Below are positions 1 through 52,756 of a DNA stretch of 64,000 nucleotides, piece by piece. Below the pieces are notes generated by a model that saw only the letters and a program-made list of their open reading frames with translations, was not told the origin of the DNA and ran no database searches. The DNA lies in the IMG/VR virus record IMGVR_UViG_3300025000_000053, positions 1 through 64,000 of that record. The stretch is one strand, 5' to 3'. Position 1 is the stretch's first letter. Each line of letters opens with the position of its first letter. The position numbers and the translations under genes are program-made.

Positions 1-239
1 TTGAGTAATCCGCAGCCAAGTCTCTAATATATTAGAGAAAGGTTCAACGACTATCCTTTAGCTTTGAAATAAGCAACAGGAGTAGGGCTCAAGTGAGTGG
101 GTGAAAATCCCTTAAATCGAAATAGGAAGCTCCTTAATGAATAATTCATTAAGGATGAAGATATAGTCTAGTATCTTATCGAAAGATAAGGAAGTTCATA
201 AGAGAACTGTATTGTTTAACGAACAATATGAATATATCG
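1..239 (+). mobile_element. Group I intron 1 (3' part; 5' end outside window), no ORF in P6, inserted in an RNAP beta-prime gene
   Basis: Core elements AATCCGCAGC (Q), GTTCAACGACTAT (R/P7), AAGATATAGTC (S/P7'), ending AATATATCG at 239; near-identical to four other copies in the window. Confidence 0.92.
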
Positions 240-404
240 GATCAAGTATCATTAAAGGTATTATTTTCTCAAGAAGCTAATCTTGAGGCAGAAAGAATTA
301 TGAAATCAAAAGGTCATATTCTTAATATCTATGGACAAAATATGAGAAAGACAACAAATGAAGGTGCTCATACTTTATTTATGCTAACGAAGTTTAATAA
401 ATAA
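240..404 (+). CDS. Last exon of a multisubunit RNA polymerase beta-prime subunit (segment starting at the final Asp of the catalytic DxDGD), probably virion RNAP
   Basis: Not in ORF track; translates DQVSLKVLFSQEANLEAERIMKSKGHILNIYGQNMRKTTNEGAHTLFMLTKFNK*, aligning by eye to RpoC [41 protein letters not shown]. Confidence 0.85.
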   Translation, partial: DQVSLKVLFSQEANLEAERIMKSKGHILNIYGQNMRKTTNEGAHTLFMLTKFNK

Positions 405-410
405 ATAATA

Positions 411-475
411 AAAATATATGTGATTTATTCACATATATTTTTTTCGTATTTTTAACATTAATAGATATATATTAT
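411..475 (+). promoter_or_regulatory. Terminator hairpin + CGTA + early-type promoter TATATATTAT (466-475)
   Basis: AAAATATATGTGA/TCACATATATTTT hairpin, then CGTA at 445 and the core motif 21 nt later; same layout at four other sites. Confidence 0.7.
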
Positions 476-523
476 TTTAGTAATATGAATAAAATAATAT
501 AAATTATAAGGGGGGTTTTCATA

Positions 524-856
524 ATGAAAATAACATTTGATTATACCATGAAGGAAGCCAATTCTATTAACGGTTTAATAACAGAGGCAAATAATGTTGC
601 TAAACTGTTATCTGAAACAAAAGGCGATGTTATTGTTATACCGTTTGAAAACAGGCTTGCAACATTGAAAGTTGTCAAAGGTGAAAAAGCTGTGCTAGAT
701 ATTAATGAAGATTTCTTTATTGATTCTTTGTCGTATTTAACACATGTTTATAACCGAATTGTACCACTTGTTTTAGCTTATAAAAATCTTATACAAGATA
801 TATTCCCTGTTGCAAAAGATTATGTAAACAAATGGTTTCCAAAGAAAGATAAATAA
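524..856 (+). CDS. Hypothetical protein (early-type promoter)
   Basis: 110-aa ORF with G-rich RBS, promoter motif upstream and terminator downstream. Confidence 0.8.
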   Translation: MKITFDYTMKEANSINGLITEANNVAKLLSETKGDVIVIPFENRLATLKVVKGEKAVLDINEDFFIDSLSYLTHVYNRIVPLVLAYKNLIQDIFPVAKDYVNKWFPKKDK

Positions 857-887
857 ATTTTTATATATTTTTATTTAATTTTACCTA

Positions 888-923
888 AAAAAATAAAGGT
901 GTAATAATCCACCTTTATTTTTT
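888..923. terminator. Intrinsic terminator hairpin
   Basis: AAAAAATAAAGGTG / CACCTTTATTTTTT inverted repeat. Confidence 0.8.
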
Positions 924-938
924 GTGTGTTCCTTGCTT

Positions 939-950
939 AACACTATTATA
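939..950 (+). promoter_or_regulatory. Late-type promoter AACA-N6-TA
   Basis: AACACTATTATA; same motif precedes capsid, sheath, terminase and other genes. Confidence 0.6.
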
Positions 951-1460
951 CTAAATTTTTATTTTCATGAACCCGTTTCCTACTATAAAAAGAAATGGGG
1001 GTGATTAAAGAATTGATAATACAATTTATATAAATATAAAACATATTTATCATAGATATTGATAATATTTTTAACTCAAATAATTTATATCTTCTATCAG
1101 TAAAATAACATATAGAAGGGAGGGATGCCTATATACACATAACGATGTATATGGGATAACCTCTAATTATTTGCGAGTTTAAAAATATTATCTTTATATA
1201 ACTTTATTTAGAATTCGCCTACAAACTCCCCATAGACACTTGTGTATATAGGCAATCTATGATGGATGGGGACACTATCGGTTTAGAATATGATGAAGAA
1301 TAATATGCTACCTATTTGTTACAATGAATTTAGATAGTGTGAAAAAATACCTACTATTTTACAATTAAATATGTTCCGATATAAATAGTAGTAATGGTGA
1401 ATTTATTTTTATAAAATAAAAATAAAGCTCTGTGTAAATAATCCACAGAGCTTTATTTTT
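950..1460 (+). ncRNA. Candidate large structured non-coding RNA of unknown family
   Basis: No ORF >=60 aa; bounded by late promoter and terminator; nested stems 1061-1084/1166-1192, 1211-1219/1396-1404, 1272-1279/1333-1340, 1351-1359/1383-1391; perfect 14-bp pairing 1126-1139/1241-1254. Confidence 0.55.
1418..1460. terminator. Bidirectional intrinsic terminator
   Basis: AAAAATAAAGCTCTGTG / CACAGAGCTTTATTTTT. Confidence 0.85.
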
Positions 1461-1805
1461 TTATTTTTTTTCAATAACATCGGGTATAATTTCTGGTTTT
1501 AAATTTTTAATTTCTTTCTGTTCAGACTTAGTACTTTTATTACTTTGTATAGGAACATTTTGAATTACTACTGGTTTTGATTTAGGGATTTCTTCCTTTA
1601 TATCATTGTCTTTATCAAAATTACGAGCTGTTAATTTAATTTCAGTACCATCTTTAAGTACTTCAACAACATTAACACCTTTACTAATCATAGCAAAGAT
1701 AGTGGAAGTTTGTTCTGTATAAGGACTTAAGATTGGTCCATACACTCCACCCTTTGCCATAATAGGAGCTGTGCTAAGGATTTTAATATTTTTAGTTTTA
1801 ATCAT
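1461..1805 (-). CDS. Hypothetical protein
   Basis: 114-aa ORF with GGAGGG RBS. Confidence 0.8.
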   Translation of the reverse strand: MIKTKNIKILSTAPIMAKGGVYGPILSPYTEQTSTIFAMISKGVNVVEVLKDGTEIKLTARNFDKDNDIKEEIPKSKPVVIQNVPIQSNKSTKSEQKEIKNLKPEIIPDVIEKK

Positions 1806-1827
1806 TTGTTAAACCCTCCAATTTTAT

Positions 1828-7776: not shown

Positions 7777-9315
7777 TTATAGTTGATTTAAGAAACTTAA
7801 GAATTCATCAGACACAACATCTTGGTTGATTTCAAGTTTTTCACCAAGTTTATCTAGATGATCATAATCAACAATAGTAAATGTTGAATTTAAAATAGTT
7901 GATAATAAATTTAAAATCAAATTAGATTTCTTTATTTCTTCAAGAGTTGAATATTTGTCTTGTATCAATGATTGATACAATGGTGTTTCTTCTAATTTAT
8001 TTAAAAATTTTGTGTTTTGAATAGTACGAGTATTTAAACGACCCTCAATATTTCCACTTATAATTTGCGGAAGATACAAACCACCCTGAATTTGTAATCT
8101 TCTCTTCAGCAATATAACAAGAATTATATATTGCTTTCTTGTTAACAAATTTAAATCTCTATATCCACCAAAATATTTGGCATAGAAATAATGAACCAAT
8201 TGTTTTTGAAATTTATTTTTCTTATGAAATTTCTTATAGAAAGTAATTTCATCTTTAGTAATCTTAACACCAATTTTTTTCTTAATTTTTTTAATTGTGC
8301 TTTTGATATTTACTTCAGATAATATTATCAATGATTCATCTATTTTATTAGAGTTCATTTCAAACTTATCTAAACCACTTAAACCATCTTCACCACTTTT
8401 ATCCGCACTTAATTCAACGAGATTAACTTTATAGTTTTTCTTAATAACAAAATAAAGTTGTTTCTCTAATATAAAAGAATTAAAATTAACAATGTTTTTA
8501 TTAAAAACATATTTAAACATAGTTTCAGTTATGATATTCTTTTTCAATAAACTGTTAAGATAAATTAATGGATCAACACCAAATATTTCTTGTTGTTCCC
8601 ACATTGGTTTATTGGAGGATAAATTCTTATTTATTTTAGCTGATACTGTCACCATTAATTTATTATAAATATTAATACCGTTACCATACAATTCAAATAA
8701 ACCTTTATAAAAAGTATAAATGTAATCAACATCTTTCTTAATGTTATTCACATTAATATATTGAAATACTACTGGAATCATTATTTTAATAGACATCGAA
8801 ATCATCATCATTATCTTGGCATGTTCATTCGTTATCTCTAATGACTCACTATACTTCTTTTTATCATTACTAGTCAAATCAATATAATAATTATCTTCAA
8901 CCATTTTGATAATCTTTTCTTTCATACTATCAGTAAATAATATACCATATAAAAGTTTAATAAAAGTTTTAGGTTTTTTAACAGGTTTAGTTTTATCATC
9001 AATAAAATATTTGAGTTTAAAGTATGACATTAATAATTCATTATTAGTATCATAAAATTTAATAAAATAATTCAAATAATGAATTATACCTTTTTCATTC
9101 TTAATTATACCATTTTCATTTTTTTTATTGGTATTATTAAGTTGATTAACATATGATTCTTTCTTAATAATAAAAACATTCAATGTACTGGCACTATCTT
9201 TTTTAAATATTTTATCAAATGGGATTATTATTAATTTCCCATCACACTTGATGATATTATCTTCTTCTTCGGGCTCCCATTCATCTACTCTTATTAAGTC
9301 GGTAACACAATCCAT
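7777..9315 (-). CDS. Non-virion RNAP promoter-specificity (sigma-like) subunit, AR9 gp226-like
   Basis: Blocks IPFDKIFKKD..NVFIIKKESY, IYNKL, LSGLDKFEMN..DESLIILSEVNIKSTIKKIKKK resemble AR9 gp226 as recalled; two genes from GroEL as in AR9 (gp226/gp228); early motifs upstream. Confidence 0.75.
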   Translation of the reverse strand: MDCVTDLIRVDEWEPEEEDNIIKCDGKLIIIPFDKIFKKDSASTLNVFIIKKESYVNQLNNTNKKNENGIIKNEKGIIHYLNYFIKFYDTNNELLMSYFKLKYFIDDKTKPVKKPKTFIKLLYGILFTDSMKEKIIKMVEDNYYIDLTSNDKKKYSESLEITNEHAKIMMMISMSIKIMIPVVFQYINVNNIKKDVDYIYTFYKGLFELYGNGINIYNKLMVTVSAKINKNLSSNKPMWEQQEIFGVDPLIYLNSLLKKNIITETMFKYVFNKNIVNFNSFILEKQLYFVIKKNYKVNLVELSADKSGEDGLSGLDKFEMNSNKIDESLIILSEVNIKSTIKKIKKKIGVKITKDEITFYKKFHKKNKFQKQLVHYFYAKYFGGYRDLNLLTRKQYIILVILLKRRLQIQGGLYLPQIISGNIEGRLNTRTIQNTKFLNKLEETPLYQSLIQDKYSTLEEIKKSNLILNLLSTILNSTFTIVDYDHLDKLGEKLEINQDVVSDEFLSFLNQL

Positions 9316-9432
9316 TATTAATATCCCACCCCCTAAAAAATACTCTCCGCTTCTGATATGTATTCTCTATTTCTATATTAATATAATATATAATTCATTT
9401 TATCTTATAATATATAGTTTAGGATGGGATAT

Positions 9433-10206
9433 CTATATTTTAGATTTTGTTACATTGGATTTCTTAGCCTTAATTTTACTTATAGGTTTAATTTTATTAA
9501 TAGCTGATTTTTTTACTCCTGATATTTTATCAATAACATTTTTAATCTTACTTTCATTTTTTTTCTTTTCTATAGTTTCTTTCTTACGTTTAATTTCATT
9601 ATTAGCATTCTTTATCTCAATCTTGATTTGATTAATATCACGAATAGACTTATTCAAATCACCTTTATTTAATTTTTTAGAATGAGAATTAAGATAAGAT
9701 TTTGATAAATATTTATTTCTATTTATTAATATATGAAAACCAATAAAATATATTGATTTTTCAAAACTTATAATTTCTCCTGGATTTCTTATTACAGGAT
9801 TATTTTTAATAACATCATTACCAAATTTATTACTAAGAAAATCAATTAATAAATCAAACTGATTAAAAGCATATGCAAAAGTAAAAGTAAAACTTGGTGA
9901 ATTTGAAAAGAATCTAACAAAATAATGGTCTATTGTTACCTCTCTTTTAAAATCTTCATCTTCCATAGTAAATGATACTACTACATCATATGAGTTATTT
10001 CTTTCAGATTCACTATGTAAAATAAAATGAAGAAGATAATCGTCTTTATCTCTATAAATAGTTGGTTCATTAATTTTTTTATTCTTTATTAATGAATAGT
10101 ATCTTCTATTAAGGTCATCCTTAATAAGTTGTCTATTCGGAATTGCATTACTACCTTTACCCATGGGATTGTCGATAAAATCTTTTAATGTCTGTAGTAT
10201 GAACAA
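9433..10206 (-). CDS. Hypothetical protein with basic C-terminal tail
   Basis: 257-aa ORF between GroEL and the sigma-like gene. Confidence 0.75.
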   Translation of the reverse strand: MFILQTLKDFIDNPMGKGSNAIPNRQLIKDDLNRRYYSLIKNKKINEPTIYRDKDDYLLHFILHSESERNNSYDVVVSFTMEDEDFKREVTIDHYFVRFFSNSPSFTFTFAYAFNQFDLLIDFLSNKFGNDVIKNNPVIRNPGEIISFEKSIYFIGFHILINRNKYLSKSYLNSHSKKLNKGDLNKSIRDINQIKIEIKNANNEIKRKKETIEKKKNESKIKNVIDKISGVKKSAINKIKPISKIKAKKSNVTKSKI

Positions 10207-16720: not shown

Positions 16721-17520
16721 TTGGAAAATAACATAAAAGAAATTATTGATTTATTAAGTAAAAGGGTATTTATTATTTCTGATATTATGGAAAGTAGGGA
16801 AACATTCAATGAGAATCTTGAAAACATTTATGACTATTTAAAACAAGGTTTCGAAATTAAAGAATTAAGAACTTGTCCAACCTATTTTAGATTTAAAGAA
16901 ACAACTGAAATTCATGCTTTACAATTAAGACATTTCCTTACCAATTTAATGTTTTGGGAACCATTGATGAGACTTGATGTTTCAGATAAATTAGATGAAA
17001 CTTATATAATTGATTGTACTAAAATGTCAACTAAGTTAATTAAGAATTATATAGATAATAAAATTGTTATACCATATAAAAGGATAGTTAATAATAAGAA
17101 AATGAATAAAGTTATTCATGATATGATTTATAATTTATCAAGAATATCAACAGATTTCAATATTATACTTGGTATGAGTATTAATATTGAAACCTTTATT
17201 GATGTTGCTAAAAGAAATCCAAGATTTAATGAAATTATTAGAACACAGTTGGATGAAAATATGCAACCAACTGAGATTGAAGAATATCTAGATAAATTAA
17301 TGCATGAACAAATAGAGATACTAAAAAATGATGAAAAAGATAATTTATTAAAACCAATACTTAAAGCAGGTGCAGGTATAAAAAGTAAACAATTAGCAGA
17401 GTTCTCAATTTCAGGCGGGTTAAAACCGAATCTCAGTGGTACTACAATACCTATCCCAATTAATACTAATTATGTAGTCGGTGGACTAAGAAATATATCT
17501 AATTATTATATAGATTCCCT
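16721..17520 (+). CDS. RNAP beta-prime C-terminal subunit (probably non-virion), exon 1; join(16721..17520,18695..19901), 668 aa
   Basis: GGLKPNLSG..PINTNYVVGGL..YYIDSL joins GGRKSL..NSGHFAR, the bridge-helix region; early motif at 16658. Confidence 0.88.
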
Positions 17521-18694
17521 AAATTACATTGGGGCTTAGTATAGTAATATACTTCGAACAACTTCTTTAATTGTCGGGGAAGCTCTAAGAGCCTAAAACT
17601 ACCAAGCTATAATAGTGATATTATGGTGGCTTAATCTAATCAATTAAGATACGGTAACAAGGTTTTAGGATTGAGTAATCCGCAGCTAAGATTCTTTACC
17701 TTAATAAAAAAATTAGAATAAAAAATATTGGGTTGAAATTGGAGGTGAAGTAATGAATGATAAATATTATGCTCGAAAAATGTTAATAATAATTAGACTT
17801 AAACCTACAATTTATAGAACTATTTATATTAATAATAATCCTACTAGGTATGAAGTTAGTAATTACGGTGATATTAGAAATAGTAAAACTAATTTGATTA
17901 TGAGACCTACTACTGATAATAAAGGATATATGAGGATTTGTTTAACTATTAATGGTAAAAAGATTACAAAAAAAATTCATAGATTAGTAGCAGAATGTTT
18001 TATTCATAAAAAATATAGTTTTCAAAATCAAGTTAATCATAAAAATAGGATTAGAAATGATAATTATGTATGTAATTTAGAATGGGTTACAGCTAAACAA
18101 AATCAGGAACATTCATATTTAGTTGGAGGACCAAGAAAAGTTAAAAAAGGTGAAAAGATGTTTAACGCTAAACACTATGAAATAGATATAATAAAAGTAT
18201 GTGAACTTTTAGAAAGAAAATTTAAATCAAAAGTAATTAATGAAATAACTGGTGTAAATAAACATGTTATAAATAAAATAAAAGAAGGTAAACTCTGGAA
18301 ACATATTTCAAAAGACTTTAATATACCTAGTCCTCGACAAAAAGAAATATATAGCTATAAATTAAAAGAAAGAATAAAAGAATTACTAATATTAAAACAT
18401 ACTTCAACCCAAATAATTAATATTTTAGATTTAGAATATAGTCAACCATATTATTCTTTAATCTTCAATATTAAGAATAAAATGAAAAAAGGTAAAGAAT
18501 AAAGTTCAACGACTATCCTTTAGCTTTGAAATAAGCATTAGGAGTAGGGCTCAAGTGAGTGGGTGAAAATCCCTTAAATCGAAATAGGAAGCATCTTTAA
18601 TAATAAAGATGATGATATAGTCTGGTATCCTAAGGAAAGCTTAGGGAAGTTCATAGGAGAACTGTATAGACTAACAATCTATATGAACTTTACG
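17521..18694 (+). mobile_element. Group I intron 2 (1174 nt) with HNH endonuclease ORF in P6
   Basis: P1 CCCU|AA..UUGGGG with U.G pair; conserved core; terminal G 18694; splicing restores CT|A Leu codon and frame. Confidence 0.93.
17753..18502 (+). CDS. Intron-encoded NUMOD4-HNH homing endonuclease (I-HmuI-like)
   Basis: YEVSNYG, IHRLVAECFI, VNHKN..N...NLEWVT; GGAGGTG RBS. Confidence 0.92.
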   Translation: MNDKYYARKMLIIIRLKPTIYRTIYINNNPTRYEVSNYGDIRNSKTNLIMRPTTDNKGYMRICLTINGKKITKKIHRLVAECFIHKKYSFQNQVNHKNRIRNDNYVCNLEWVTAKQNQEHSYLVGGPRKVKKGEKMFNAKHYEIDIIKVCELLERKFKSKVINEITGVNKHVINKIKEGKLWKHISKDFNIPSPRQKEIYSYKLKERIKELLILKHTSTQIINILDLEYSQPYYSLIFNIKNKMKKGKE

Positions 18695-19901
18695 AGGTGG
18701 AAGAAAATCTTTAATTATGAGTAAACTTGAGATGGGGAATTCTGGACATTTCGCAAGAATGGTCATGTTACTTGTTTCAAGTATTAATTTATCAAAAACT
18801 GTTGATTCATGTAATAGTGTACATCCAATAAAAATTGAACTATCTTCTAAAGAACATTTGATAAGAATGAGAGGTAGATATTACAGGACTATGTATTCTA
18901 GGAATTATCAATTGTTACGAGGAGATGAATATAATTTAATTAATGAAACTATTTTTGTTAAATCGCCTGCTACATGTGCATGTAAAGATGGTATATGTAA
19001 AATGTGTTATGGTGATTTATCTTATATAAATAAAGATATTACTATAGGTGCATTTGCTGGTACAAAAATTACTGAACCCGTATCACAAAATATTCTATCA
19101 TCTAAACACTTATTAACAACTAAATCACAAAAAATAGAATTCAATGAAGAATTCTATAAGTTTTTTAATATAAGTGGTAATGAAATCATTATTAATTCAA
19201 ATGAAGATAATGATGATTTAGATTTAGATGATTATACCTTACTTATAATTAAAAGTAATATTAAAACAATAGCAGATTATGATGATAATGATATGGAATT
19301 TAATGAATATGTAAATCTATTCCATGTATATAATAAGAAAACTGATGAAATGATAGAAATAAAAGAAACTGAAGAAAAAGATTTATATATATCTCCTGAA
19401 TTAAGAAAATTATTTAAGAAAAAAAGTAAGAAAGAAGTTTATGAGATTGATTTTAAAACTCTTGATGATGATAATAGAATATTCGTTATAGAAGTACTTA
19501 ATAATGAATTAACTAGACCTCTGTATGATATTATAAGGTTAATTGATAGAGTTGATTATAGAATCATACATTGGAACTGTGTAACAATTGATCAAATGTG
19601 TCAAAAGATGTTAGACTTAATAATAGAGTCTGAAATTAATTCAGATTCAGTTCATGGTGAATTAATACTAACACCATTACTAAGAGATAAAGACAATATA
19701 TTAGAAAGACCTAAATTCAACAGATATTTTAATAATGATGATGGATATCAAATATTAACAGTTAAAGCTGCTTTAGAGAAACATCCATCAGTATTAGTTG
19801 GCTTATCATTCCAAGCACTTGATAGACAATTAACAAACCCATTAACATTTAGAAAGAAAGAAAGTTCATTTATTGATCCTTTCTTTAAAGAAAGACCATA
19901 A
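18695..19901 (+). CDS. RNAP beta-prime C-terminal subunit, exon 2
   Basis: Zn site CACKDGICKMCYG; trigger-loop GAFAGTKITEPVSQNILSSKH; SVLVGLSFQ. Confidence 0.88.
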
Positions 19902-26437: not shown

Positions 26438-26878
26438 ATGAGTTCAATGAATACTCATCAATATGTAATTATAACTTTACCAAGTTCTATTTATGATTCT
26501 AGTAGGGAAGTGGCATCTTTATCATTAAAGAATTATATTTTTCAGTTTTGTCAAAAGCATGGAATTACTCCAGCTAAATTTCCTGTAGATATTTATAGCA
26601 CATATAACAAATGTCCAGAATATTACTGTGATGGTAGTAACCCATTTGAAATTATTGATGCTAATTTCGATGGAATAAAGTTAATTTCCAAAAAGGAAAA
26701 AGTTGAATTAGCTGTAGCCATTGAAACAAATTTACCATGTGAGAATATTGTTAGACTTTTTGAACTAAAAATTATTCAAGGGTTTTCAGTTCATGTTTTC
26801 GGCTCAATATTCCGTCATGATAACATATCGGGTTTATTAGCAAAGTTGTTCAAGATAATCAATGAAAAAAAGAAATAA
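26438..26878 (+). CDS. Hypothetical protein
   Basis: 146-aa ORF with RBS. Confidence 0.7.
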   Translation: MSSMNTHQYVIITLPSSIYDSSREVASLSLKNYIFQFCQKHGITPAKFPVDIYSTYNKCPEYYCDGSNPFEIIDANFDGIKLISKKEKVELAVAIETNLPCENIVRLFELKIIQGFSVHVFGSIFRHDNISGLLAKLFKIINEKKK

Positions 26879-39884: not shown

Positions 39885-40529
39885 GTGAAGAAACCATATA
39901 TTTATGATTTAGAAACTAAGAATTTATCTTTTATACAAACGGCTAAAGATTTACATATACTTGGTATTAAGAATAATGTATTTTTTTTAAAGCTATATGA
40001 TAAATCTTTAAAGAAAGTTGATCCCCATTCACCATTTTTAACAGATGATCAAATTATTAAAATTATTAATGAGTGTATGATTAACCCTTGGTATTATTTA
40101 AGAGAGGTTGCAAGGATTCCAGATCAGGGTGGTCGTGGTATAAGTTACCAGTTAAATAGAGGTAATTTAGCATCTACTTGGTGTTATTTAAATGGTATAG
40201 ACGACTATTTAGTATTACCAAGACAAATAGGTAAAACACAAAGTAAACTATGTATAATAAATTGGACATTTTTACTAGGTACTACTAATTCACAATTTAT
40301 GTTTTTGAGTTTAGATCAAACGGCCGCTAATGAAAATCTTGATAGGTTAAAAAAACAAAGAGATTTATTACCTCCTTATTTACAATTTAAACTAGTAACT
40401 TCAGATGAAGGTAAAATTATTAAAGAAATTGATAATGTTAAAACTCTAGTTAACCCAGTTAATAATAATAAAATTGTAACTAAACCTTCTGCTAAATCAA
40501 CTGAAGCTGCTGAGAAAATAGGTAGGGGT
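39885..40529 (+). CDS. terL: Terminase large subunit, exon 1; join(39885..40529,40916..42334), 687 aa
   Basis: Walker A LPRQIGKT; spliced GRG|NTQPIQMYDE gives Walker B; late motif 39840-39851. Confidence 0.88.
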
Positions 40530-40915
40530 AATTTTTTAGCCCCAACATATAGTAATATATGTTAAAAACTTCTTTAATTGTCGGGGAAGCTCTTAGAGCC
40601 TAAAACTACTAAATTAATATAGTAATATATTAATGGCTTGGACTAATCAACCAAGGTATAGTAATAAGGTTTTAGGATTGGGTGATCCGCAGCTAAGATT
40701 CCTGTATACAGGAATAAAGTTCAACGACTATCCCATGGATCTAAAATGATCATTAGGAGTAGGGCTCAAGTGAGTGGGTGAAAATCCCTTAAATCGAAAT
40801 AGGAGACTCCTTATTATTTAATAATAAGGATGAAGATATAGTCTAGTATCCTAAGGAAATCTTAGGGAAGTTCATAAGAGAACTGCATAGATTAACGACC
40901 TATGTGAATATATCG
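40530..40915 (+). mobile_element. Group I intron 3 (386 nt, no ORF)
   Basis: P1 GGGGU|..GCCCC; conserved core; terminal G 40915; frame restored. Confidence 0.93.
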
Positions 40916-42334
40916 AATACTCAACCAATTCAGATGTATGACGAAGTAGAATTTACGAGTTATATTAAAACTATTATTGAAGCTGCTGCCATGGCGTTTA
41001 AAACGGCTTCAGACAATGCTAAGAGAAATAATGCCCCTTATTCAAGGTCCCTACTCTCAACTCCTGGTGATCTCGATACTAAAGCTGGACAAGATGCCAT
41101 GGAAATAATTAGTAAGACATATAGATGGACTGAAAAATTTTATGATATGAAGATAGATGATGTTAAAGAAATTATAAAAAATAATTCAGAAAATAGGATA
41201 GTTTATATTGAATATGAGTATAAACAATTAGGAAAAGATGAAGAGTGGTTTAATGATTCATGTGCAATAATAGGTAATAACCCATTAAAAATTAAGAGAG
41301 AAATATTATTACAAAGAATGAGAGGTTCTTCTAATTCCCCATTTGAACCAGAAGATTTAGAACTTATTAGGGAAAAACAGGGTAAAATAATTGAAGAAAT
41401 CTTTATTAATAAATTATTTAGATTAGATGTTTATAAACCATTAGTAAGAGATAGGATATATTTTATATGTGTTGACGTTTCTAAAGGTTATGGTCAAGAT
41501 AATTCAGCCGTAGTAATATTAGACCCATATGAATTAAAACCTGTGGCAGAATTTGAATCGCCATATATAGGTGTAACTCAACTAAAGAATTTTTTATATA
41601 CACTTGTTAAAAAATATTTACCTAGAAGTATTTTATGTATTGAAAGAAATGAAAATGGTGAATCTATATTAGATGGATTGAGATATACTGATATAATGCA
41701 TAATTTATATTTTGATAAAGATAAAGATCCAATTGCCTCTCAATTAGATGATAGGATGGATAGTCAGGGATTTTTAAAACAAGAAGCTTTAAAACGTAAA
41801 TTATATGGAGTATGGACTGGAACTAAATCAAGACAAGTGATGTTTAGTTTGTTAGAAACACATATTGCAGAGTATAAAGATAATTTTATTTGTGCTAATA
41901 TTATTAATGATTTATTTAAATTAGTTATGAAAAAGAATGGTAAGATTGAAGCTGAGTCTGGATTCCATGATGATTCTATTATGGCTTATTTAATAGGATT
42001 GTATGTATATTATCATGGTAATAATCTACACTATTTTGGTTTTGTTAAGGGTCAGTTACCTGATGAGGAAGAAAGAAATAAAGGATTACAAACATATGAT
42101 GAGATAATGGAAGAAATGCCTGATGAAGAAAGACAATATTTCAATGAAAGTTTTGGTTCTAAATCTATAGATGATTATCAACAACATGTAATAGAAGAAC
42201 TTAAAAGAGTACAAAAAGAACAAAATAGTTTAATTAATATGAGTGGAATGATGAAACCCTCAACATATGCAGAAGAATATGATAATGATGAGAATGAAAT
42301 ATCATTAGATTTCTTTGATGAATTAAATAATTAA
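40916..42334 (+). CDS. terL: Terminase large subunit, exon 2
   Basis: MYDE, LSTP, nuclease CVDVSKG, IERN, HDDSIMA. Confidence 0.88.
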   Translation, partial: NTQPIQMYDEVEFTSYIKTIIEAAAMAFKTASDNAKRNNAPYSRSLLSTPGDLDTKAGQDAMEIISKTYRWTEKFYDMKIDDVKEIIKNNSENRIVYIEYEYKQLGKDEEWFNDSCAIIGNNPLKIKREILLQRMRGSSNSPFEPEDLELIREKQGKIIEEIFINKLFRLDVYKPLVRDRIYFICVDVSKGYGQDNSAVVILDPYELKPVAEFESPYIGVTQLKNFLYTLVKKYLPRSILCIERNENGESILDGLRYTDIMHNLYFDKDKDPIASQLDDRMDSQGFLKQEALKRKLYGVWTGTKSRQVMFSLLETHIAEYKDNFICANIINDLFKLVMKKNGKIEAESGFHDDSIMAYLIGLYVYYHGNNLHYFGFVKGQLPDEEERNKGLQTYDEIMEEMPDEERQYFNESFGSKSIDDYQQHVIEELKRVQKEQNSLINMSGMMKPSTYAEEYDNDENEISLDFFDELNN

Positions 42335-47736: not shown

Positions 47737-47775
47737 ATTTATGTCTATACTGAATATTCAGTATAGACATAAATT
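47737..47775. terminator. Bidirectional terminator between tube and portal genes
   Basis: ATTTATGTCTATACTGAAT / ATTCAGTATAGACATAAAT inverted repeat. Confidence 0.75.
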
Positions 47776-48209
47776 TATTGTTCAGTTGTTGCTTCATCAG
47801 GATTCTCTAATTTAAATTTTTCATACTCTAATTTAGAATCCTCTATCACTTCATCAAACATTCTCCAAGGTAACATAGGTAACATTTCTCTTGATGCCTT
47901 ATTCATAACAATATCTTTAATTTTATTATCTTTATCAGTTGGAGTAAGATTTTCACCTGTTGTTGTTTTTAACATAAATGCTAAAACTTGATCGGCGTTT
48001 GAAATTAAATCACTCATATTCATAGTATTTAATGCTTTTGGTAAATTTAAACTATATATAAAAGTTTCAATTATTTCTTGGGGTATTTCAGTACTAGAAA
48101 ATTTCATTACTTTTTTATAAAATTCAGTTATATTAGGGTTAAAATCAAGTTGATCACTTACAACTCTACCAATAAATTTAGCATTAGCCATAACTAAAGT
48201 TTTGGCATA
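47775..48209 (-). CDS. Portal protein, exon 2
   Basis: YAKTLVMANAKFIGRV continues exon 1 in frame; resembles T4 gp20 ..DELKFAKFI.. helix. Confidence 0.72.
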   Translation of the reverse strand, partial: YAKTLVMANAKFIGRVVSDQLDFNPNITEFYKKVMKFSSTEIPQEIIETFIYSLNLPKALNTMNMSDLISNADQVLAFMLKTTTGENLTPTDKDNKIKDIVMNKASREMLPMLPWRMFDEVIEDSKLEYEKFKLENPDEATTEQ

Positions 48210-48595
48210 CGATATATTCACATAGGTCGTTAATCTATGCAGTTCTCTTATGAACTTCCTTATCTTTTGATAAGATACTAGACTATATCTTCATCCTTAT
48301 TATTTCTAATAAGGAGCTCTCCACTTCGATTTAAGGGATTCTCACCCACTCACTTGAGCCCTACTCCTGTTGATCATTTCAGATCCAATGGGATAGTCGT
48401 TGAACCTTTCTCATAGTAATACTATGAGACTTGGCTGCGGATCATCTAATCTTAAACATTATTACCTTACTCAGGTTAATTACTCCTGACCACTTATACC
48501 ATCGCTAATATAGTTTGGTAGTTTAAGATTTAAAGGCTTCCCCGACAATTAAAAGAGAATTGGTATTATAGATTGCTCTATAACCTGACTAATAA
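48210..48595 (-). mobile_element. Group I intron 4 (386 nt, no ORF)
   Basis: P1 CUGAU|UUAUUA GUCAG; conserved core on minus strand; terminal G at 48210. Confidence 0.92.
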
Positions 48596-50389
48596 ATCAG
48601 CTTCATTAATATAATTCATTATTACTGATGGAACTCCACTTCCATTAATATATGATGTTTTCAACATTTCCATTAAATCTGTATTTAATTGTATGTCCTG
48701 ACCTGCTAATACATCAAATTCTATACCCTTGTCTCCTGTTCTACCTACAGGAACAAAAATACCTTTAGCATGACCAATTTTAGATACCATCGTATTATAA
48801 TTCAGTAAATCCATAAAATTTATATCTCTTTCTTTCATAGTTCTAGCAACATCTTGTAGTTTATTAATAATATTTGCATCTATACCAGAATTTTTAATAT
48901 AATTAATTCTAGTATCATTAGATTTACTAATAATAGAAACCATTTTAAATATTAATAATGCCAGATAAAGCTTAGCATAAAATAATGATTTCATTAATAT
49001 GCTAGTACCTTCACCTTCTTCATTCTCATTGACAGTAAATTCAGTTATATAATCAACTGGTATAAATTGAAATTTTATTTTCTTCTTATACATTTCGTTA
49101 TAAGATAGGCAGTTCATTATTAATTCTTTAAATTTAATATTTTCTTCTAAATATTTCTTATTAAATGCTTTAACAATCTTTTCAGTTAATTTAGTTAAAA
49201 ACATATTTTCAAGTTCAGGTGTATTGAGATTCACTGTATTAACTCTTATTGTATTTATAAAAGGAGATTTAGTAATAGGTGATGATTCATGTATATAATA
49301 ATAACCTATAACATGTTCCATTATTTTAACTGGTATCATTTTTTTAGGACTAATTAATTTTATATAACAATCAGTTATATTATCAAAATTATTATTTTTA
49401 TCTTTTTCTGTAGATATAGTTCCATCATTAAAAAATGAAGATATTGAATTAGTTCTATTTTTAGTCTTAGCGTTATTTTTAATGGCTTCTTCAACATTTT
49501 TCTTAAATTTTTCATCAGTAATAAGTTCCGATACATCTACACCTTCTAAAATAGGTATATGTACAACATCATTTTCAATCTCAATGTCTTTAACTAAACT
49601 ATTTATTTCATTTTTTAAAGATGATGGATTACTTTTAATATTACCTTCATTTTTTAATTCAGTTATAAAATTGTCATCAATAGATTCAGTAATAGAAAAT
49701 GTTGTTAATTCTTTATTTTTCTTATCATAAAAATTTTCAAATAGTTTTGAATATGGTACAGTATATGCATAGTACTTACCATATTGTAGAGTTTTCGGTA
49801 TAATATGATTCTTTAATTTATTTGCTAATTTAAATTTCTTTTCTAAATTTTCAACTAAAGAAATATAACTTTGTTTATCCTCTTCACTACAGTTAGAACT
49901 TTTAAATTGTAAATTTCTAGATATAGATTGAGTTACATCATCAGCTGTTACAATAGCATCCCTAGTTGCATTAACAGCTTCCTCCAATTCAAATAAATGA
50001 CTACAGATTAAATCAAGGTCTTCATATAAAAGATTTTGATTTCTATATCTTTCATTAAAAAATTGAAATACAGCATTATCTTCTGCTGAAAATATATCTT
50101 CAATTTTTTTTATATTTGAAAATTGTTGATTGTCATAATCATTAAATAATTTTACTAAAAATGTTGAAACATCTTCACCAGTAAAATCAGTTAATTTTTT
50201 TATTTCATGATAAATAACATCATCAACTTGGTCTGATAATTTCTTTAATTCTTTTTCTCTTTTAGTATCATTAGAAAAAGTATTAAAAGATATTTTATCT
50301 ATTAAATCCGTAAATAAAGAATTCAATTTTACTAAGGGCTTTTCAATTTTTTTTACAACTTTTTTTTTATCATCTTTTTCATTACTCAC
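48596..50389 (-). CDS. Portal protein, exon 1; complement join gives 742 aa
   Basis: YGKYY, GTSIL, IEFDVLAG, YINGSGVPS motifs typical of T4 gp20-like portals. Confidence 0.72.
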
Positions 50390-50441
50390 TTATTCACACC
50401 CCTTATTATTTTTTAATAAAAATACTAGGATATATTATATC

Positions 50442-51083
50442 CTAGTATTTAATACATGTATACTTATGAAATAAGTTAAAATAATTAGTTTCTGATACTA
50501 TTAAACTTTCAAATAAATTACTATTAATAATATCTTTAAAGTAAATATTATTTTTTATACTTTTTAACATTAATGGTATTAGTTTAGAAGTTAATCGTAT
50601 TTTATAGTTATTCTCCGAAAAAGTAATAATATTCTTACTATTTAATTTTTTTATTATATCATCTGATAATATTATTTTATTAGTATTATTAAATTCATTT
50701 ATTTTATTTAGAGCTATTTTATATAGAATAACTAATTCTTTTGTTAATGAATTGATATTAGTTAAAGTTCCTATTTGAAAAACATTATCACCTTTTTCAT
50801 CTGTTAATAATATTTTGTCTTTTGAAATTGTTAAATATTTTATATGCTTTTTATTTTCTTGAATAACTTTAAATATATCCTTGGAATTTATACAAAATAT
50901 TTGTTTTTCTTCAATCATACTAAAGACTTGAACATCCATTTTACCAAAATGTTCTCCATAGCTCAAATGTTTATCATCGTTAATAAATAATATAGTACCA
51001 TCAGAAAATATAAAATATTCTGTAGATACCTTTTTAGCTAATTGGTTAAATTCATTTATTTTATTTACTTCAATTTTATACAT
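50442..51083 (-). CDS. Hypothetical protein
   Basis: 213-aa ORF with AAGGAG RBS downstream of polymerase. Confidence 0.75.
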   Translation of the reverse strand: MYKIEVNKINEFNQLAKKVSTEYFIFSDGTILFINDDKHLSYGEHFGKMDVQVFSMIEEKQIFCINSKDIFKVIQENKKHIKYLTISKDKILLTDEKGDNVFQIGTLTNINSLTKELVILYKIALNKINEFNNTNKIILSDDIIKKLNSKNIITFSENNYKIRLTSKLIPLMLKSIKNNIYFKDIINSNLFESLIVSETNYFNLFHKYTCIKY

Positions 51084-51094
51084 AAAATACTCCT

Positions 51095-51649
51095 TTATAC
51101 TACAAGTTTATTAATATAATAACTATTAACATCATTAATATCAATAATTAATTTACTCTTAGGTTTAATATTTAATTCCTCTTTTATAATAGAGTCTATT
51201 TCTTCTAACTTAGGAAGATTGAAAAATGCATGACCTAAACTATTCAAATCACCAGTTAACATATTATCTACAAATATTTTTCCTATATCTTCTTTCTTAC
51301 CCTTATCATCAATATCTTCAATATAATTAGGTAACTCTTTATTAGTTTCTATAATTAATTTACCTATCATAGAATTTGGTTCAATATTAAAACAAATAAT
51401 AATACTTGGATACATAGCAGAAAAATCCATATCAATAATATTATCAAATATAAATTTACTTTTTTTACCTAAAATTTCAATACCAACATGTGAGTTTAAT
51501 AATGGATTAGCAACTAGTGCTCCTGCAAATTTTTCATCTTCTTCTTCCTCATTATTTTTAACTGATTCTACACCATATTGAATATTATTGTTATTACCTA
51601 TTATTAAACCTTGTTTATAAAATTCTATATATGCACGATTTTTTAAGAA
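51095..51649 (-). CDS. polB: Family B DNA polymerase N-terminal subunit, exon 2 (motif A)
   Basis: FAGALV..P, DMDFSAMYPSII..NI. Confidence 0.88.
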   Translation of the reverse strand, partial: FLKNRAYIEFYKQGLIIGNNNNIQYGVESVKNNEEEEDEKFAGALVANPLLNSHVGIEILGKKSKFIFDNIIDMDFSAMYPSIIICFNIEPNSMIGKLIIETNKELPNYIEDIDDKGKKEDIGKIFVDNMLTGDLNSLGHAFFNLPKLEEIDSIIKEELNIKPKSKLIIDINDVNSYYINKLVV

Positions 51650-52756
51650 CGTATTATTCACATAGGTCGTTAGTCTATGCAGTTCTCTTATGAACTTCCT
51701 TATCTTTCAATAAGATACCAGACTATATCATTAACCTAATAATTTCTTATTGGGCTACTTCCTATTTCGATTTAAGGGATTTTCACCCACTCACTTGAGC
51801 CCTACTCCTAATGATCATTTCAGACCCAATGGGATAGTCGTTGAACCTTTTACCTTTTTTCGTATTCTGTCAATAACATTTCTGACGGCGTCATTATTTT
51901 TTAAAAATAATTTTTCTTTGATTTCTTTATTACTAAATCCCATTTTAATTAAAGAAATTATTTCTTCCTTTAATTCAATAGGATATTTTAGAGTAAAGTT
52001 AAAATCTTTTTTGGGTGGGAACTCATATTTTTTTGTTACATGTCTCCAAAATTTTTTATAATATAACTCTGTAATATATGACTGGCTTAAATCATATTTC
52101 AATGAAAGTTCTTTTGTAGTTTTCCCTTTCACTAAATCATTACAGATTGATATGATTAATTTTTTAGGATATTTATTAAAATGACTCCGTTCCCCAATAC
52201 AGGTTAAACCAATATCCCTAGCATGTATAGAATTATCTTTATGAGTTGACCATTCCAAATTATTAGAATAATTATTTTTTACATTACCGTCTTTATGATT
52301 AACTACTGGAAGATTATCGGGATTGGGAATAAACGCTTTTGCGACTAATCTGCTAATTTGTCTTCTATATTGAATACCATTTATATATAAATTAACATAT
52401 TCCCGTTTATTTTTAAATTCATTATTTTTTAATATTCTTCCAGAAACAGAATTTCTAACTCTACCAAGATCGCTAATTAAATATTTAGTTTTAATATTAT
52501 TAATTATAATCGGTCTAAAAAATTCAACATTAACTTTCATATTTTTCACCCTTTCTTTTTATTAGCGTCTAAAGAGTTTAAAAGGAATTTTGGCTGCGGA
52601 TTACTCAATCCTAAAACCTTATTACTATACCTTAGTTAATTAGACTAAGCCATTAATATATCACTATATTAACTTAGTAGTTTTAGGCTCTAAGAGCTTC
52701 CCCGACAATTAAAGAAGTTTTCTATATATGTTACCACATATAGGGTCTAATAATTA
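51650..52756 (-). mobile_element. Group I intron 5 (1107 nt) with HNH endonuclease ORF
   Basis: P1 GGUU|UAA..UUAGACC; conserved core; terminal G 51650; joins RQTV|FLKNR in frame. Confidence 0.93.
51815..52549 (-). CDS. Intron-encoded NUMOD4-HNH homing endonuclease
   Basis: YLISDLGRV, RLVAKAFIPNP, VNHKDG..NN..NLEW; paralogous to 17753-18502. Confidence 0.92.
   Translation of the reverse strand: MKNMKVNVEFFRPIIINNIKTKYLISDLGRVRNSVSGRILKNNEFKNKREYVNLYINGIQYRRQISRLVAKAFIPNPDNLPVVNHKDGNVKNNYSNNLEWSTHKDNSIHARDIGLTCIGERSHFNKYPKKLIISICNDLVKGKTTKELSLKYDLSQSYITELYYKKFWRHVTKKYEFPPKKDFNFTLKYPIELKEEIISLIKMGFSNKEIKEKLFLKNNDAVRNVIDRIRKKVKGSTTIPLGLK

What the first reader, a model, noticed from the sequence alone, without database searches (positions are those of the whole stretch)
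1..52756. The five introns are mosaics of each other
Seen: sharing patterns are incongruent. P6 groups introns 1+4 (CAGCCAAGTCTC..GAGAAAGG) and 2+3 (CAGCTAAGATTC..GAATAAAG). The post-P7 stem groups 1+2 (CCTTTAGCTTTGAAATAAGCA) against 3+4+5 (CCCAT..G(A/G)TCT.AAATGATCA). The next bases group 1+4 (ACAGGAG) against 2+3+5 (TTAGGAG). P9 groups 1+4+5 (TCTTAT..AAAGATAAG) against 2+3 (TCCTAAGGAAA.CTTAGG). Inference: gene conversion or module swapping among dispersed introns, which could also move HNH ORFs between sites. Copies in both orientations could mediate inversions.
Basis: seen in the sequence. Interest (0 to 1): 0.6.

Follow-up and report, generated by a model that had tools for sequence, protein, structure and literature searches.

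The report
Mosaic group I introns, jumbo phage
The five self-splicing introns in this window belong to a family of about twenty in an uncultured jumbo phage, and they have exchanged individual RNA helices with one another by recombination, so that copies within one genome evolve together; no inversion between them is seen.

Summary
The window holds five related group I introns: I01 <1-239(+), I02 17521-18694(+), I03 40530-40915(+), I04 48595-48210(-) and I05 52756-51650(-). Informative sites support 23|145 (8 sites), 12|345 (8), 25|134 (6) and 14|235 (5), clustered helix by helix, and no single tree fits them.

The five alone give only weak statistics. The window is the start of a 249,853-base phage contig with about 21 family members. 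Ten introns on one haplotype reject a single tree (PHI p<=2e-4; 0 of 300 single-tree simulations reach the observed conflict).

A collinear relative of about 85% identity is decisive. Introns at the same site keep their P1-P5 half. Their P6, P7.1, P7.2, P8 and P9 helices match paralogues in their own genome instead.

The best explanation is short-patch gene conversion among dispersed copies, filtered by selection for helix pairing. Turnover of open reading frames (ORFs) in the P6 loop is rapid, but the HNH genes are only 29-53% identical, so no recent HNH transfer is shown. No inversion is seen. I could not check reads, so an assembly artefact is unlikely but not excluded.

The parts
1..239 (+). 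I01: the 3' part (P4' to the terminal G) of a group I intron, cut by the start of the record. The complete copy, with a short P5, is read from the identical contig G006.
   Evidence: Rfam RF00028 scores 56 bits, truncated at the 5' end. nhmmer gives E=2e-49. G006:9591-10790 is 100% identical to window 1-1200, and the 5' half lies upstream there.
240..404 (+). Downstream exon of I01. It is the end of an RNA polymerase beta'-like gene; the junction reads GGDYDG|DQV, which is the DxDGD metal-binding motif.
   Evidence: Read from the sequence. The upstream exon in the strain-B copy matches phrog_2986, RNA polymerase beta subunit. The 61-aa exon itself has no family hit.
16721..17520 (+). Exon 1 of the RNA polymerase beta subunit gene. 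It ends ...GATTCCCT, and this U pairs with a G of the GGGG guide sequence.
   Evidence: Matches phrog_3015 positions 41-233, E=1.5e-11. Sequence read.
17521..18694 (+). I02: a group I intron of 1174 bases with an ORF in the P6 loop.
   Evidence: nhmmer E=9e-40 for the 5' half and 3e-48 for the 3' half. The reading frame is restored across the junction: CT|A GGT ... reaches the ATG at 18717 in frame.
17753..18502 (+). HNH endonuclease ORF of I02 (249 aa). Its stop codon lies in the 3' strand of P6.
   Evidence: Pfam NUMOD4 27 bits (above cut-off) and HNH_3 22.1 bits (below the 24.8 cut-off). PHROG phrog_59, HNH endonuclease, E=1e-36.
18695..19901 (+). Exon 2 of the RNA polymerase beta subunit gene.
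   Evidence: Matches phrog_3015 positions 246-650, E=1.2e-39, which continues from exon 1.
39885..40529 (+). Exon 1 of the terminase large subunit gene (215 codons). It ends GGGGT, which pairs with GCCCC.
   Evidence: Matches phrog_32359, E=3.6e-55. Sequence read.
40530..40915 (+). I03: a group I intron of 386 bases without an ORF.
   Evidence: nhmmer E=8e-39 and 4.5e-50. Exon 2 continues in frame. Rfam's model misses it.
40916..42334 (+). Exon 2 of the terminase large subunit gene.
   Evidence: Matches phrog_2 positions 407-612, E=1.3e-8. tblastn finds terminases of jumbo phages at 31-34% identity.
48210..48595 (-). I04: a group I intron of 386 bases without an ORF.
   Evidence: Rfam RF00028 scores 73.4 bits against a gathering score of 50, over the full model. 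Both exons are in frame.
48596..50389 (-). Exon 1 of a virion structural protein gene (598 codons).
   Evidence: Matches phrog_3004, E=7e-15.
47775..48209 (-). Exon 2 of the same virion protein gene.
   Evidence: Frame continuity read from the sequence. No family hit.
51650..52756 (-). I05: a group I intron of 1107 bases with an ORF in the P6 loop.
   Evidence: nhmmer E=7e-39 and 1.6e-50. Exon 1 is exactly 417 codons and exon 2 is in frame.
51815..52549 (-). HNH endonuclease ORF of I05 (244 aa). It runs on through P6', P7 and into P7.1.
   Evidence: Pfam NUMOD4 24.7 bits (above cut-off) and HNH_3 23.9 bits (below the 24.8 cut-off). It is 28.8% identical to the I02 ORF.
52757..54007 (-). Exon 1 of a family-B DNA polymerase gene.
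   Evidence: Pfam DNA_pol_B_exo1 29.3 bits. Matches phrog_3011 positions 40-407, E=5e-44.
51095..51649 (-). Exon 2 of the family-B DNA polymerase gene.
   Evidence: Pfam DNA_pol_B 24 bits. Matches phrog_3011 positions 427-566.

Best explanation
The five elements are members of one family of about twenty IA-type group I introns (with P7.1 and P7.2) that interrupt core genes of an uncultured low-G+C jumbo phage.

The copies share invariant core stretches: P3/P4, P7, the P7.2-P3' region, P7' and the segment after P9. Exact matches between copies run from 27 to 168 bases. During recombination-dependent replication, in single or mixed infections, these stretches let a broken or invading strand prime on a non-allelic intron copy. 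This step is inferred.

Non-crossover repair then copies a short patch of about 20-170 bases, typically one hairpin (P6, P7.1, P7.2, P8, P9 or P9.1), from one intron into another without disturbing the flanking exons. Crossovers would fuse unrelated essential genes and would be lost.

Selection keeps only products that still fold. Local hairpins therefore move as whole units, while the site-specific P1-P2 guide region and the long-range P3/P3' pairing stay with the site.

The result is a mosaic of helix alleles and concerted evolution of copies within a lineage. The same process replaces P6 loops, so endonuclease ORFs are lost or exchanged with the loop.

Shown here: the mosaic, its statistical support, the contrast between orthologues and paralogues, the preserved pairing, the intact host genes and the presence of a UvsX-like recombinase gene. 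Inferred: the molecular pathway (gene conversion of the synthesis-dependent strand-annealing type) and any role of HNH nicks in starting it.
For: 1. Family and anatomy.
- About 21 copies lie in the 249,853-base record.
- The consensus structure has 29 of 64 pairs with compensatory changes, including the long-range P3 helix.

2. Allele table.
- Helix alleles are shared reticulately.
- I12 combines the P2 of I05, the short P5 of I09/I10/I17/I19, the P6, P7.1 and P9.1 of I01, and the P8 of I05/I11.
- I05 and I11 share an exact 168-base 3' tract but differ in P2, P5 and P6.

3. Recombination tests on ten introns of one haplotype (the part of G000 that is also held by G006).
- PHI gives z from -5.3 to -6.9 and p<=2e-4.
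- After dropping the 3' partner of every predicted pair, p is 0.005, 0.003 and 2e-4 for windows of 2, 10 and 20 informative sites, but 0.10 for a window of 5.
- None of 300 single-tree GTR+G simulations reaches the observed 57% of incompatible site pairs.
- Seventeen introns give PHI z from -5.3 to -7.3.

4. Orthologues against paralogues.
- G004 is about 85% identical and collinear.
- I04 and its orthologue J03 differ at 7 of about 156 bases in P2-P5.
- They differ at 13 of 29 bases in P6, 6 of 20 in P9 and 13 in P8, whereas paralogues in each genome match at 0-3 differences.
- Over all orthologous pairs the nearest relative is a paralogue rather than the orthologue in 12:2 cases for the P6 stem, 9:3 for P7.1, 11:2 for P7.2, 8:1 for P8 and 9:4 for P9. 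For P2 the orthologue is nearer, 9:3.

5. Concerted evolution.
- The P7.2 stem allele CTCAAGTGAG is present in 14 of 15 G000 introns.
- CCTAAGTAGG is present in 8 of 10 G004 introns. The two alleles differ by two compensatory pairs. Fisher p=3e-4.

6. The same site in two strains.
- I01 and I19 differ in P6, P7.1, P8, P9 and P9.1, while I01 matches I12 or I10 at 0-2 differences in those helices.

7. Host genes are intact.
- Exon pairs hit consecutive parts of one protein profile and stay in frame.

8. The sister sample 3300025000, a separate IMG/VR sample id, carries the same allele pool in other combinations.
- These include third variants at the I03 and I04 sites.

9. A UvsX-like recombinase gene is present (phrog_97, E=3e-27) and is itself split by I10 and I11.
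Against: - The five window introns alone give only weak site-level signals.
- G000, G004 and G006 probably come from one metagenome assembly. G004 and G006 carry sample id 3300025010. The metagenome scan returned only a contig of G000's exact length, Ga0209318_1000017, and G006 duplicates 85 kb of G000.
- The record is a strain chimera. Bases 1-21,181 duplicate 228,254-249,853 at 81-89% identity. 'Within one genome' is therefore strictly secure only for I01-I11.
- Contigs start and end inside introns, so the assembler did struggle with these repeats.
- Ectopic exchange within a genome cannot be separated from exchange between co-infecting genomes.
- No conversion event was observed directly.
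Confidence: 0.75

Rival explanations
1. Exchange only at the population level. Each site is repeatedly re-invaded or replaced by different intron variants from co-infecting phages (homing plus allelic recombination inside the intron). There is no conversion between non-allelic copies within a genome, and the shared alleles simply reflect a common external pool.
For: - Several strains of 81-90% identity co-occur in one sample.
- Intron presence varies between strains. I20 and I21 are only in strain B. J05 and J11 are only in G004. The I20 site is intron-less at 14673/14674 in strain A.
- Three different module combinations are found at the I03 and I04 sites in three contigs.
- HNH endonucleases that could drive homing are present.
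Against: - The same helix allele sits in introns at different sites, so at least one non-allelic transfer per shared allele is still needed.
- The genome-specific P7.2 allele (14:1 against 2:8, p=3e-4) and the exact paralogue matches point to homogenisation within a lineage.
- Most copies have no endonuclease gene.
Confidence: 0.15
2. Assembly artefact. Repeated k-mers shared by intron copies, and by co-occurring strains, led the assembler to collapse or mix paths, creating false shared modules.
For: - G000 starts inside I01, G006 ends inside I11, and G004 starts inside an intron.
- The record joins two strains.
- Exact shared tracts reach 168 bases.
- No reads could be examined.
Against: - Adjacent variable modules lie 14-50 bases apart. 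Most junctions would therefore be spanned by single reads or long k-mers; this is an inference about typical short-read assembly.
- Shared alleles often differ by single or compensatory changes, for example P8 of I01 against I10 and P6 of I04 against I10. Collapse would not create such differences.
- P3/P3' pairing is kept in all but 2 of 18 sequences, both at one closing pair.
- Exons on both sides belong to the same gene and are collinear with G004.
- Contigs of a different sample id (3300025000) show the same phenomenon.
Confidence: 0.07
3. Vertical descent on a single tree, with convergent or compensatory evolution of the helices and rate heterogeneity producing the conflicts.
For: - For the five introns alone, 23 of 300 single-tree simulations reach the observed conflict.
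- PHI for the five loses significance after collapsing stems.
- RNA stems do produce correlated changes.
Against: - Conflicting characters are whole helices with 6-7 differences and identical loops, for example the 9-base P6 loop shared by I01, I12 and I16 and the 28-base P8 shared by I05, I11 and I12.
- Ten introns give 0 of 300 simulations, and PHI stays significant after stem collapse for three of the four window sizes.
- Orthologues differ where paralogues are identical.
Confidence: 0.03

Closest known systems
Recombination between the td, nrdB and sunY group I introns of phage T4 (Bryk and Belfort 1990, 'Spontaneous shuffling of domains between introns of phage T4'). I cite this from memory; it was not found in the paper library.
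   Same: Homologous core sequences of different group I introns in one phage genome act as sites of recombination and yield chimeric introns.
   Different: - In T4 the events were selected in the laboratory, were crossovers that deleted the DNA between the introns, and involved three distantly similar introns.
- Here the products are natural, non-crossover, helix-sized patches among about twenty closely related copies.
- Gene order is intact and there is a concerted-evolution signature.
Homing of phage group I introns by HNH nicking endonucleases (I-HmuI of SPO1/SP82, I-BasI, I-TwoI of Twort), as referenced in PMC12908238, and the HNH gp210 of PhiPA3 encoded by an intron in an RNA polymerase gene (PMC11620839).
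   Same: - Group I introns in phage DNA polymerase and RNA polymerase genes, placed at conserved motifs.
- ORFs of NUMOD4 plus HNH type in a peripheral loop.
- Gene conversion as the mode of spread.
- Presence or absence differs between related strains.
   Different: - Homing is allelic and moves the whole intron with flanking exon markers.
- The exchange here is between introns at different sites and moves sub-intron modules.
- Most copies have no ORF.
- No endonuclease activity was tested.
Intron-rich huge phages: the Jug phages, with 18.5 group I introns per genome on average, and crAss-like phages (PMC12880540).
   Same: About twenty group I introns per jumbo-phage genome, which split the terminase, the DNA polymerase and other core genes.
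   Different: - That work counts and validates introns. The passages I read (a term search, not the whole paper) say nothing of mosaic or concerted evolution among copies.
- This phage is a different, low-G+C lineage. Its terminase is 31-34% identical to those of Bacillus BpSp, Yersinia phiR1-37 and the Staphylococcus jumbo phages.
- Most of its introns lie in multisubunit RNA polymerase genes.
Concerted evolution of dispersed repeats by ectopic gene conversion, as in rRNA operons and tuf or other duplicated bacterial genes. This is general knowledge.
   Same: Paralogues within a genome are more alike than orthologues between genomes, the conversion tracts are patchy, and gene order is preserved.
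   Different: The repeats here are selfish ribozymes inside unrelated essential genes. The tracts follow RNA helices, and the site-specific guide region is excluded.

Membership tests
Group I intron (Rfam RF00028), IA-type with P7.1/P7.2 | Match to the family covariance model at or above the gathering score. | tested here: inconclusive
   I04 scores 73.4 bits and the truncated I01 scores 56 bits, against a gathering score of 50. I02, I03 and I05 are not reported, even at a loose E-value. They are unambiguous homologues of I04 by nhmmer (E from 1e-39 to 1e-51).
Group I intron (Rfam RF00028), IA-type with P7.1/P7.2 | Conserved P3-P9 core supported by compensatory base changes. | tested here: met
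   RNAalifold on 18 ORF-less copies predicts 64 pairs, of which 29 have changes on both sides. P3, P5, P5a, P6, P7.1, P7.2, P9 and P9.1 all covary. RNAalifold's pairing for P7 differs from the canonical one given by the Rfam alignment.
Group I intron (Rfam RF00028), IA-type with P7.1/P7.2 | The 5' exon ends in a U that pairs with a G of an internal guide sequence, the intron ends in G, and removal restores the reading frame. | tested here: met
   Read from the sequence for I02-I05. The P1 pairings are CCCU/GGGG, GGGGU/GCCCC, GCUGAU/GUCAG and GGUU/GACC. The frames are continuous, and each exon pair hits consecutive parts of one PHROG profile.
Group I intron (Rfam RF00028), IA-type with P7.1/P7.2 | Self-splicing in vitro or spliced RNA in vivo. 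| not testable with these tools
Intron-encoded HNH homing endonuclease of I-HmuI type | An HNH catalytic domain with NUMOD-type DNA-binding modules, encoded in a peripheral loop. | tested here: inconclusive
   NUMOD4 is above its cut-off in the I02, I05 and I07 ORFs. HNH_3 scores 22.1-23.9 bits, just under its 24.8 cut-off. PHROG phrog_59, HNH endonuclease, gives E=1e-36 for the I02 ORF, the only intron ORF scanned against PHROGs. The ORFs lie in the P6 loop.
Intron-encoded HNH homing endonuclease of I-HmuI type | Site-specific nicking or cutting of the intron-less allele. | not testable with these tools
   This needs enzyme assays.
Concerted evolution by ectopic gene conversion | The phylogenetic signal changes along the sequence beyond what one tree allows. 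| tested here: met
   PHI p<=2e-4 for 10 and 17 copies, and 0 of 300 single-tree simulations for ten copies. The five window copies alone are only weakly significant.
Concerted evolution by ectopic gene conversion | Paralogues in one genome are closer than orthologues between genomes. | tested here: met
   Met for P6, P7.1, P7.2, P8 and P9; not for P1-P2 or part of P5. The P7.2 allele is distributed 14:1 against 2:8, p=3e-4.
Concerted evolution by ectopic gene conversion | Flanking DNA is not rearranged (non-crossover outcome). | tested here: met
   G000 and G004 are collinear over the whole length, and the exon pairs are intact.
Repeat-mediated inversion between inverted intron copies | Synteny breakpoints or inverted segments bounded by introns in relatives. 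| tested here: not met
   No inversion is seen in G004 or in L033 and L042, which span I03 to I04. Only close relatives were compared.

The most novel reading that the evidence does not exclude
A family of about twenty ribozymes in a jumbo phage behaves as one evolving unit. Helix-sized ectopic conversion patches continually repair and homogenise copies at unrelated sites. This lets ORF-less introns persist instead of decaying, and it removes endonuclease genes precisely by copying an ORF-less P6 from a paralogue. That would be a route out of the usual cycle of invasion, degeneration and loss. It would also make the intron set a genome-wide network of recombination hotspots inside the phage's most conserved genes.
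Probability: 0.35. Interest if true: 0.75.

Novelty: new variant of a known kind. Interest (0 to 1): 0.6.

Why it matters
Group I introns in phages are usually treated as independent selfish insertions. Each is thought to follow its own cycle of homing, endonuclease decay and loss.

Here the copies are coupled. They exchange helices and evolve in concert, and this has three consequences:
- Intron phylogenies, and dating of invasions from intron sequence, become unreliable.
- It offers a mechanism for the long persistence of ORF-less introns and for precise loss of endonuclease genes.
- About twenty islands of homology are placed inside RNA polymerase, DNA polymerase, terminase and recombinase genes. 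These can seed recombination between co-infecting strains.

There is also a practical side:
- The repeats break metagenome assemblies and produced a strain-chimeric 'complete' record.
- The standard covariance model misses most copies, so gene calls in such phages are fragmented.

Tried and rejected
- **Rfam at gathering score on the whole window:** no hit. At a loose E-value only I04 was found, and on small loci only I04 and I01. I therefore defined the family with nhmmer profiles of my own.
- **The sixth motif hit, at 26571:** one mismatch, inside an ORF and with no profile match. Rejected as chance.
- **PHI on the five with the usual 100-base window:** not significant. The patches are shorter than the window.
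- **Parametric bootstrap on the five:** p about 0.08. The maximum-likelihood tree absorbs the conflict into long terminal branches, so the test is conservative.
- **GENECONV-like test on ten introns:** gap columns confound it, so I used only the five-intron result, with caution.
- **The look-up of encoding contigs with the I05 HNH protein:** nothing on record.
- **Metagenome scan with an I04-specific junction:** it returned only a contig of G000's exact length, which I take to be the source contig itself. It gave no independent replicate.
- **Paper searches for T4 intron domain shuffling and for concerted evolution of group I introns:** nothing pertinent. One search failed on the format of its terms.
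- **Recent HNH transfer between sites:** rejected, because the proteins are 29-53% identical.
- **Inversions:** no support.
- **Joined exons:** spliced exons were not searched as one sequence. Each exon was searched by reference on its own.

Full report
**What the window is.** The window is bases 1-64,000 of a 249,853-base IMG/VR virus record, G000. A metagenome scan later returned a contig of exactly that length, Ga0209318_1000017, which I take to be the same contig. G+C is about 25%. The nearest cultured phages are distant: the terminase exon is 31-34% identical to those of Bacillus phage BpSp, Yersinia phiR1-37, Listeria LPJP1 and the Staphylococcus jumbo phages. Many genes match the split multisubunit RNA polymerase of phiKZ-like jumbo phages.

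**Checking the observation.** I placed the introns from P1 pairing and reading frames:

| Intron | Window coordinates | Length and ORF | Host gene |
|---|---|---|---|
| I01 | <1-239 (+) | cut by the record start | RNA polymerase beta', DxDGD motif |
| I02 | 17521-18694 (+) | 1174 bases, ORF in the P6 loop | RNA polymerase beta |
| I03 | 40530-40915 (+) | 386 bases, no ORF | large terminase |
| I04 | 48595-48210 (-) | 386 bases, no ORF | virion structural protein |
| I05 | 52756-51650 (-) | 1107 bases, ORF in the P6 loop | family-B DNA polymerase |

- Each exon pair stays in frame and hits consecutive parts of one protein profile. The pairs are RNA polymerase beta (phrog_3015, positions 41-233 then 246-650), large terminase, a virion structural protein, and family-B DNA polymerase (phrog_3011, positions 40-407 then 427-566). 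Exons were searched one by one by reference; I made no joined sequence.
- I01 splits the codons of the GGDYDG|DQV motif of an RNA polymerase beta'-like gene.
- Rfam's group I model scores I04 at 73.4 bits and the truncated I01 at 56 bits, but misses I02, I03 and I05. Profile searches show that all five are close homologues.

**The groupings.** Informative columns of the five aligned cores give these splits:

| Split | Sites | Where |
|---|---|---|
| 23\|145 | 8 | P6 ends and P9 |
| 12\|345 | 8 | seven contiguous in P7.1, plus P9.1 |
| 25\|134 | 6 | P8 flanks, P7' and the 3' end |
| 14\|235 | 5 | P6 and the two bases after P7.1 |
| 34\|125 | 2 | scattered |

The split 12|345 is incompatible with 23|145 and with 14|235. 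The split 25|134 is incompatible with 23|145 and with 12|345. Per-helix identities make the same point:
- I01/I02 are 91% identical in P7.1 but 65% in P9.
- I01/I04 are 95% identical in P9 but 69% in P7.1.
- I02/I03 are 93% identical in P6 but 65% in P7.1.

**Is it more than chance?** On the five alone, site-level tests are weak:
- PHI is not significant at a 100-base window.
- PHI gives p=0.017 for adjacent sites and loses significance after stem partners are collapsed.
- A single-tree simulation reaches the observed 50% of incompatible pairs in 23 of 300 runs.
- A fragment test gives Bonferroni p of 0.006-0.03 for I01/I04 (P8-P9), I01/I03 and I01/I05 (P2-P4), I01/I02 (P7.1) and I03/I05. I01's gapped P5 columns inflate its pairs.

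The conflicting characters are nevertheless whole hairpins that differ at 6-7 positions, including 2-3 compensatory pairs. Parallel mutation is not a credible source.

**The wider family.** The record holds about 21 copies.
- Besides the five, they lie in further RNA polymerase subunit genes, a polymerase-like gene and a UvsX-like recombinase gene.
- A table of helix alleles shows reticulate sharing everywhere.
- I12 combines the P2 of I05, the short P5 of I09/I10/I17/I19, the P6, P7.1 and P9.1 of I01, and the P8 of I05/I11.
- I10 combines the P5 of I09, the P6 of I04, the P7.1-P7.2 of I18, and the P8 and P9 of I01.
- I05 and I11 share an exact 168-base 3' tract, although their P2, P5 and P6 differ.
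- For the ten copies that lie on one haplotype, PHI gives p<=2e-4. After stem collapse p is 0.005, 0.003 and 2e-4 for windows of 2, 10 and 20 informative sites, and 0.10 for a window of 5. No simulation out of 300 reaches the observed conflict.

**The decisive comparison.** G004 (IMGVR_UViG_3300025010_000028, 187 kb) is about 85% identical to G000 and collinear with it. It has 14 copies. Introns at the same site can therefore be compared.
- I04 and its orthologue J03 differ at 7 of about 156 bases in P2-P5, where every paralogue is far away.
- They differ at 13 of 29 bases in P6, 6 of 20 in P9 and 13 in P8, where paralogues in each genome match at 0-3 differences.
- Over all orthologous pairs, the nearest relative of P6, P7.1, P7.2, P8 and P9 is usually a paralogue (12:2, 9:3, 11:2, 8:1 and 9:4). 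For the guide-bearing P2 region it is the orthologue (9:3).
- The P7.2 stem is CTCAAGTGAG in 14 of 15 G000 copies and CCTAAGTAGG in 8 of 10 G004 copies. The alleles differ by two compensatory pairs; Fisher p=3e-4. This is concerted evolution.
- A contig of a different sample id (3300025000) carries third combinations at the I03 and I04 sites.

**Structure.** A consensus fold of 18 ORF-less copies has 29 of 64 pairs with compensatory changes. These include the long-range P3 helix, whose 3' strand sits between the swapped P7.2 and P8 modules and yet stays matched to its 5' strand. The copies are therefore under selection to fold. The exchanged units are helices, and the site-specific P1-P2 region and the P3 pairing stay with the site.

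**Mechanism.** The shared core stretches give exact matches of 27-168 bases. This is ample for a recombinase-driven strand invasion, and a UvsX-like gene is present. I infer non-crossover repair that copies short patches between non-allelic introns, during single or mixed infections. Crossovers would be removed because they would fuse unrelated essential genes. Whether HNH nicks start the events was not tested.

**The ORF and inversion parts of the interpretation.**
- The ORFs of I02, I05 and I07 are of NUMOD4 plus HNH type. They are only 29-53% identical to each other and to those of G004, so no recent HNH transfer is seen.
- All seven orthologous pairs compared in G004 differ in the content of the P6 insert: I02, I03, I05, I15, I17 and I18, plus I04, whose ORF-free P6 is of a different allele class. 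A third orthologue of I04, from another sample, carries an insert of about 800 bases there.
- ORF-less P6 hairpins are identical or nearly so to those of paralogues.
- A reverse-strand ORF insert in I17 has its homologue in J10, the orthologue of I15 (47% aa identity).
- Replacement of P6 modules, with ORF loss or exchange, is thus likely.
- No inversion is seen in G004 or in two further contigs that span I03-I04.

**Caveats.**
- The record is not a clean genome. Bases 1-21,181 duplicate 228,254-249,853 at 81-89% identity, while G004 has a single copy of that region. The record therefore looks like a permuted genome of about 228 kb whose overlap came from a second strain.
- G006 (95 kb) is identical to G000 over 1-75 kb and 99.75% identical up to 85.5 kb, but it differs upstream.
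- Contigs begin and end inside introns.
- G000, G004 and G006 probably come from one assembly.
- Reads could not be examined.
- Against an assembly artefact: the variable modules are 14-50 bases apart, shared alleles carry single and compensatory differences, pairing and gene continuity are intact, and another sample shows the same pattern. I put the artefact at about 7%.

**Comparison with what is known.**
- Intron-rich huge phages are on record, with 18.5 group I introns per Jug phage genome (PMC12880540).
- So are HNH-driven homing and an intron endonuclease in a phiKZ-like RNA polymerase gene (PMC12908238 and PMC11620839).
- Laboratory recombination between T4 introns is known to me from memory only.
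- Natural, helix-by-helix concerted evolution across about twenty copies in one phage lineage was not found in the library.
- I rate this a new variant of a known kind, with interest 0.6.

Noticed in passing
window 1-21181 against G000 228254-249853: The two ends of the record are a collinear duplicate at 81-89% identity, whereas the relative G004 has one copy. The 'complete' record looks like a permuted genome of about 228 kb whose overlap was assembled from a second strain. The start lies inside an intron.
   Followed up: partly
G000 177393-178135 (L017), outside the window: Apparent twintron. Intron I16 is inserted one base before the terminal G of intron I15. Removing I16 recreates exactly the I15 3' end and exon seen in G004 (AACAGCGAT|G|AGTGTAAAAC).
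   Followed up: partly
L092 (G006) 9118-9830, just upstream of window base 1: In the identical contig G006 the RNA polymerase beta' DxDGD codons carry two introns separated by a 9-base micro-exon (TATGATGGT). The upstream intron belongs to a different group I family.
   Followed up: partly
G000 142930-143300; G004 141231-141593, 148097-149143 and 54937-55994: There is a second group I intron family. I14 and J12 have a 5' half of that family and a 3' half (P7 onwards) resembling the main family, so they may be chimeras between families.
   Followed up: no
L006:1096-1449:- (G000 178543-178896), inside I17: The P6 loop of I17 holds a 118-aa ORF on the strand opposite to the intron, with no Pfam hit. 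A homologue (47% aa identity) sits in the P6 loop of a different intron in G004.
   Followed up: partly
L007:1770-2615:- (G000 85679-86524) and introns I10/I11 at 85021-85694: The UvsX-like recombinase gene is itself split by two introns of the family.
   Followed up: no
L027:649-1377:+ (G000 245720-246448), intron I21: One divergent intron carries its ORF in P5 rather than in P6. The ORF has an AP2 domain and is 75% identical to the ORF at the same site in G004.
   Followed up: no
window 51815-51850 (-): The I05 endonuclease ORF reads through P6', P7 and into P7.1, so a swap of P7.1 would also change the C-terminus of the protein.
   Followed up: no
window 40530-40915: Rfam RF00028 does not report the ORF-less I03 even at E<=0.01 on a 3-kb locus, although I03 is about 76% identical to I04, which scores 73 bits. 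Intron counts based on this model will be too low in such phages.
   Followed up: partly
G000 231674-232640 and 172679-173337, outside the window: Self-comparison shows tandem repeats with a period of about 138 bases at 76-84% identity. They were not examined.
   Followed up: no
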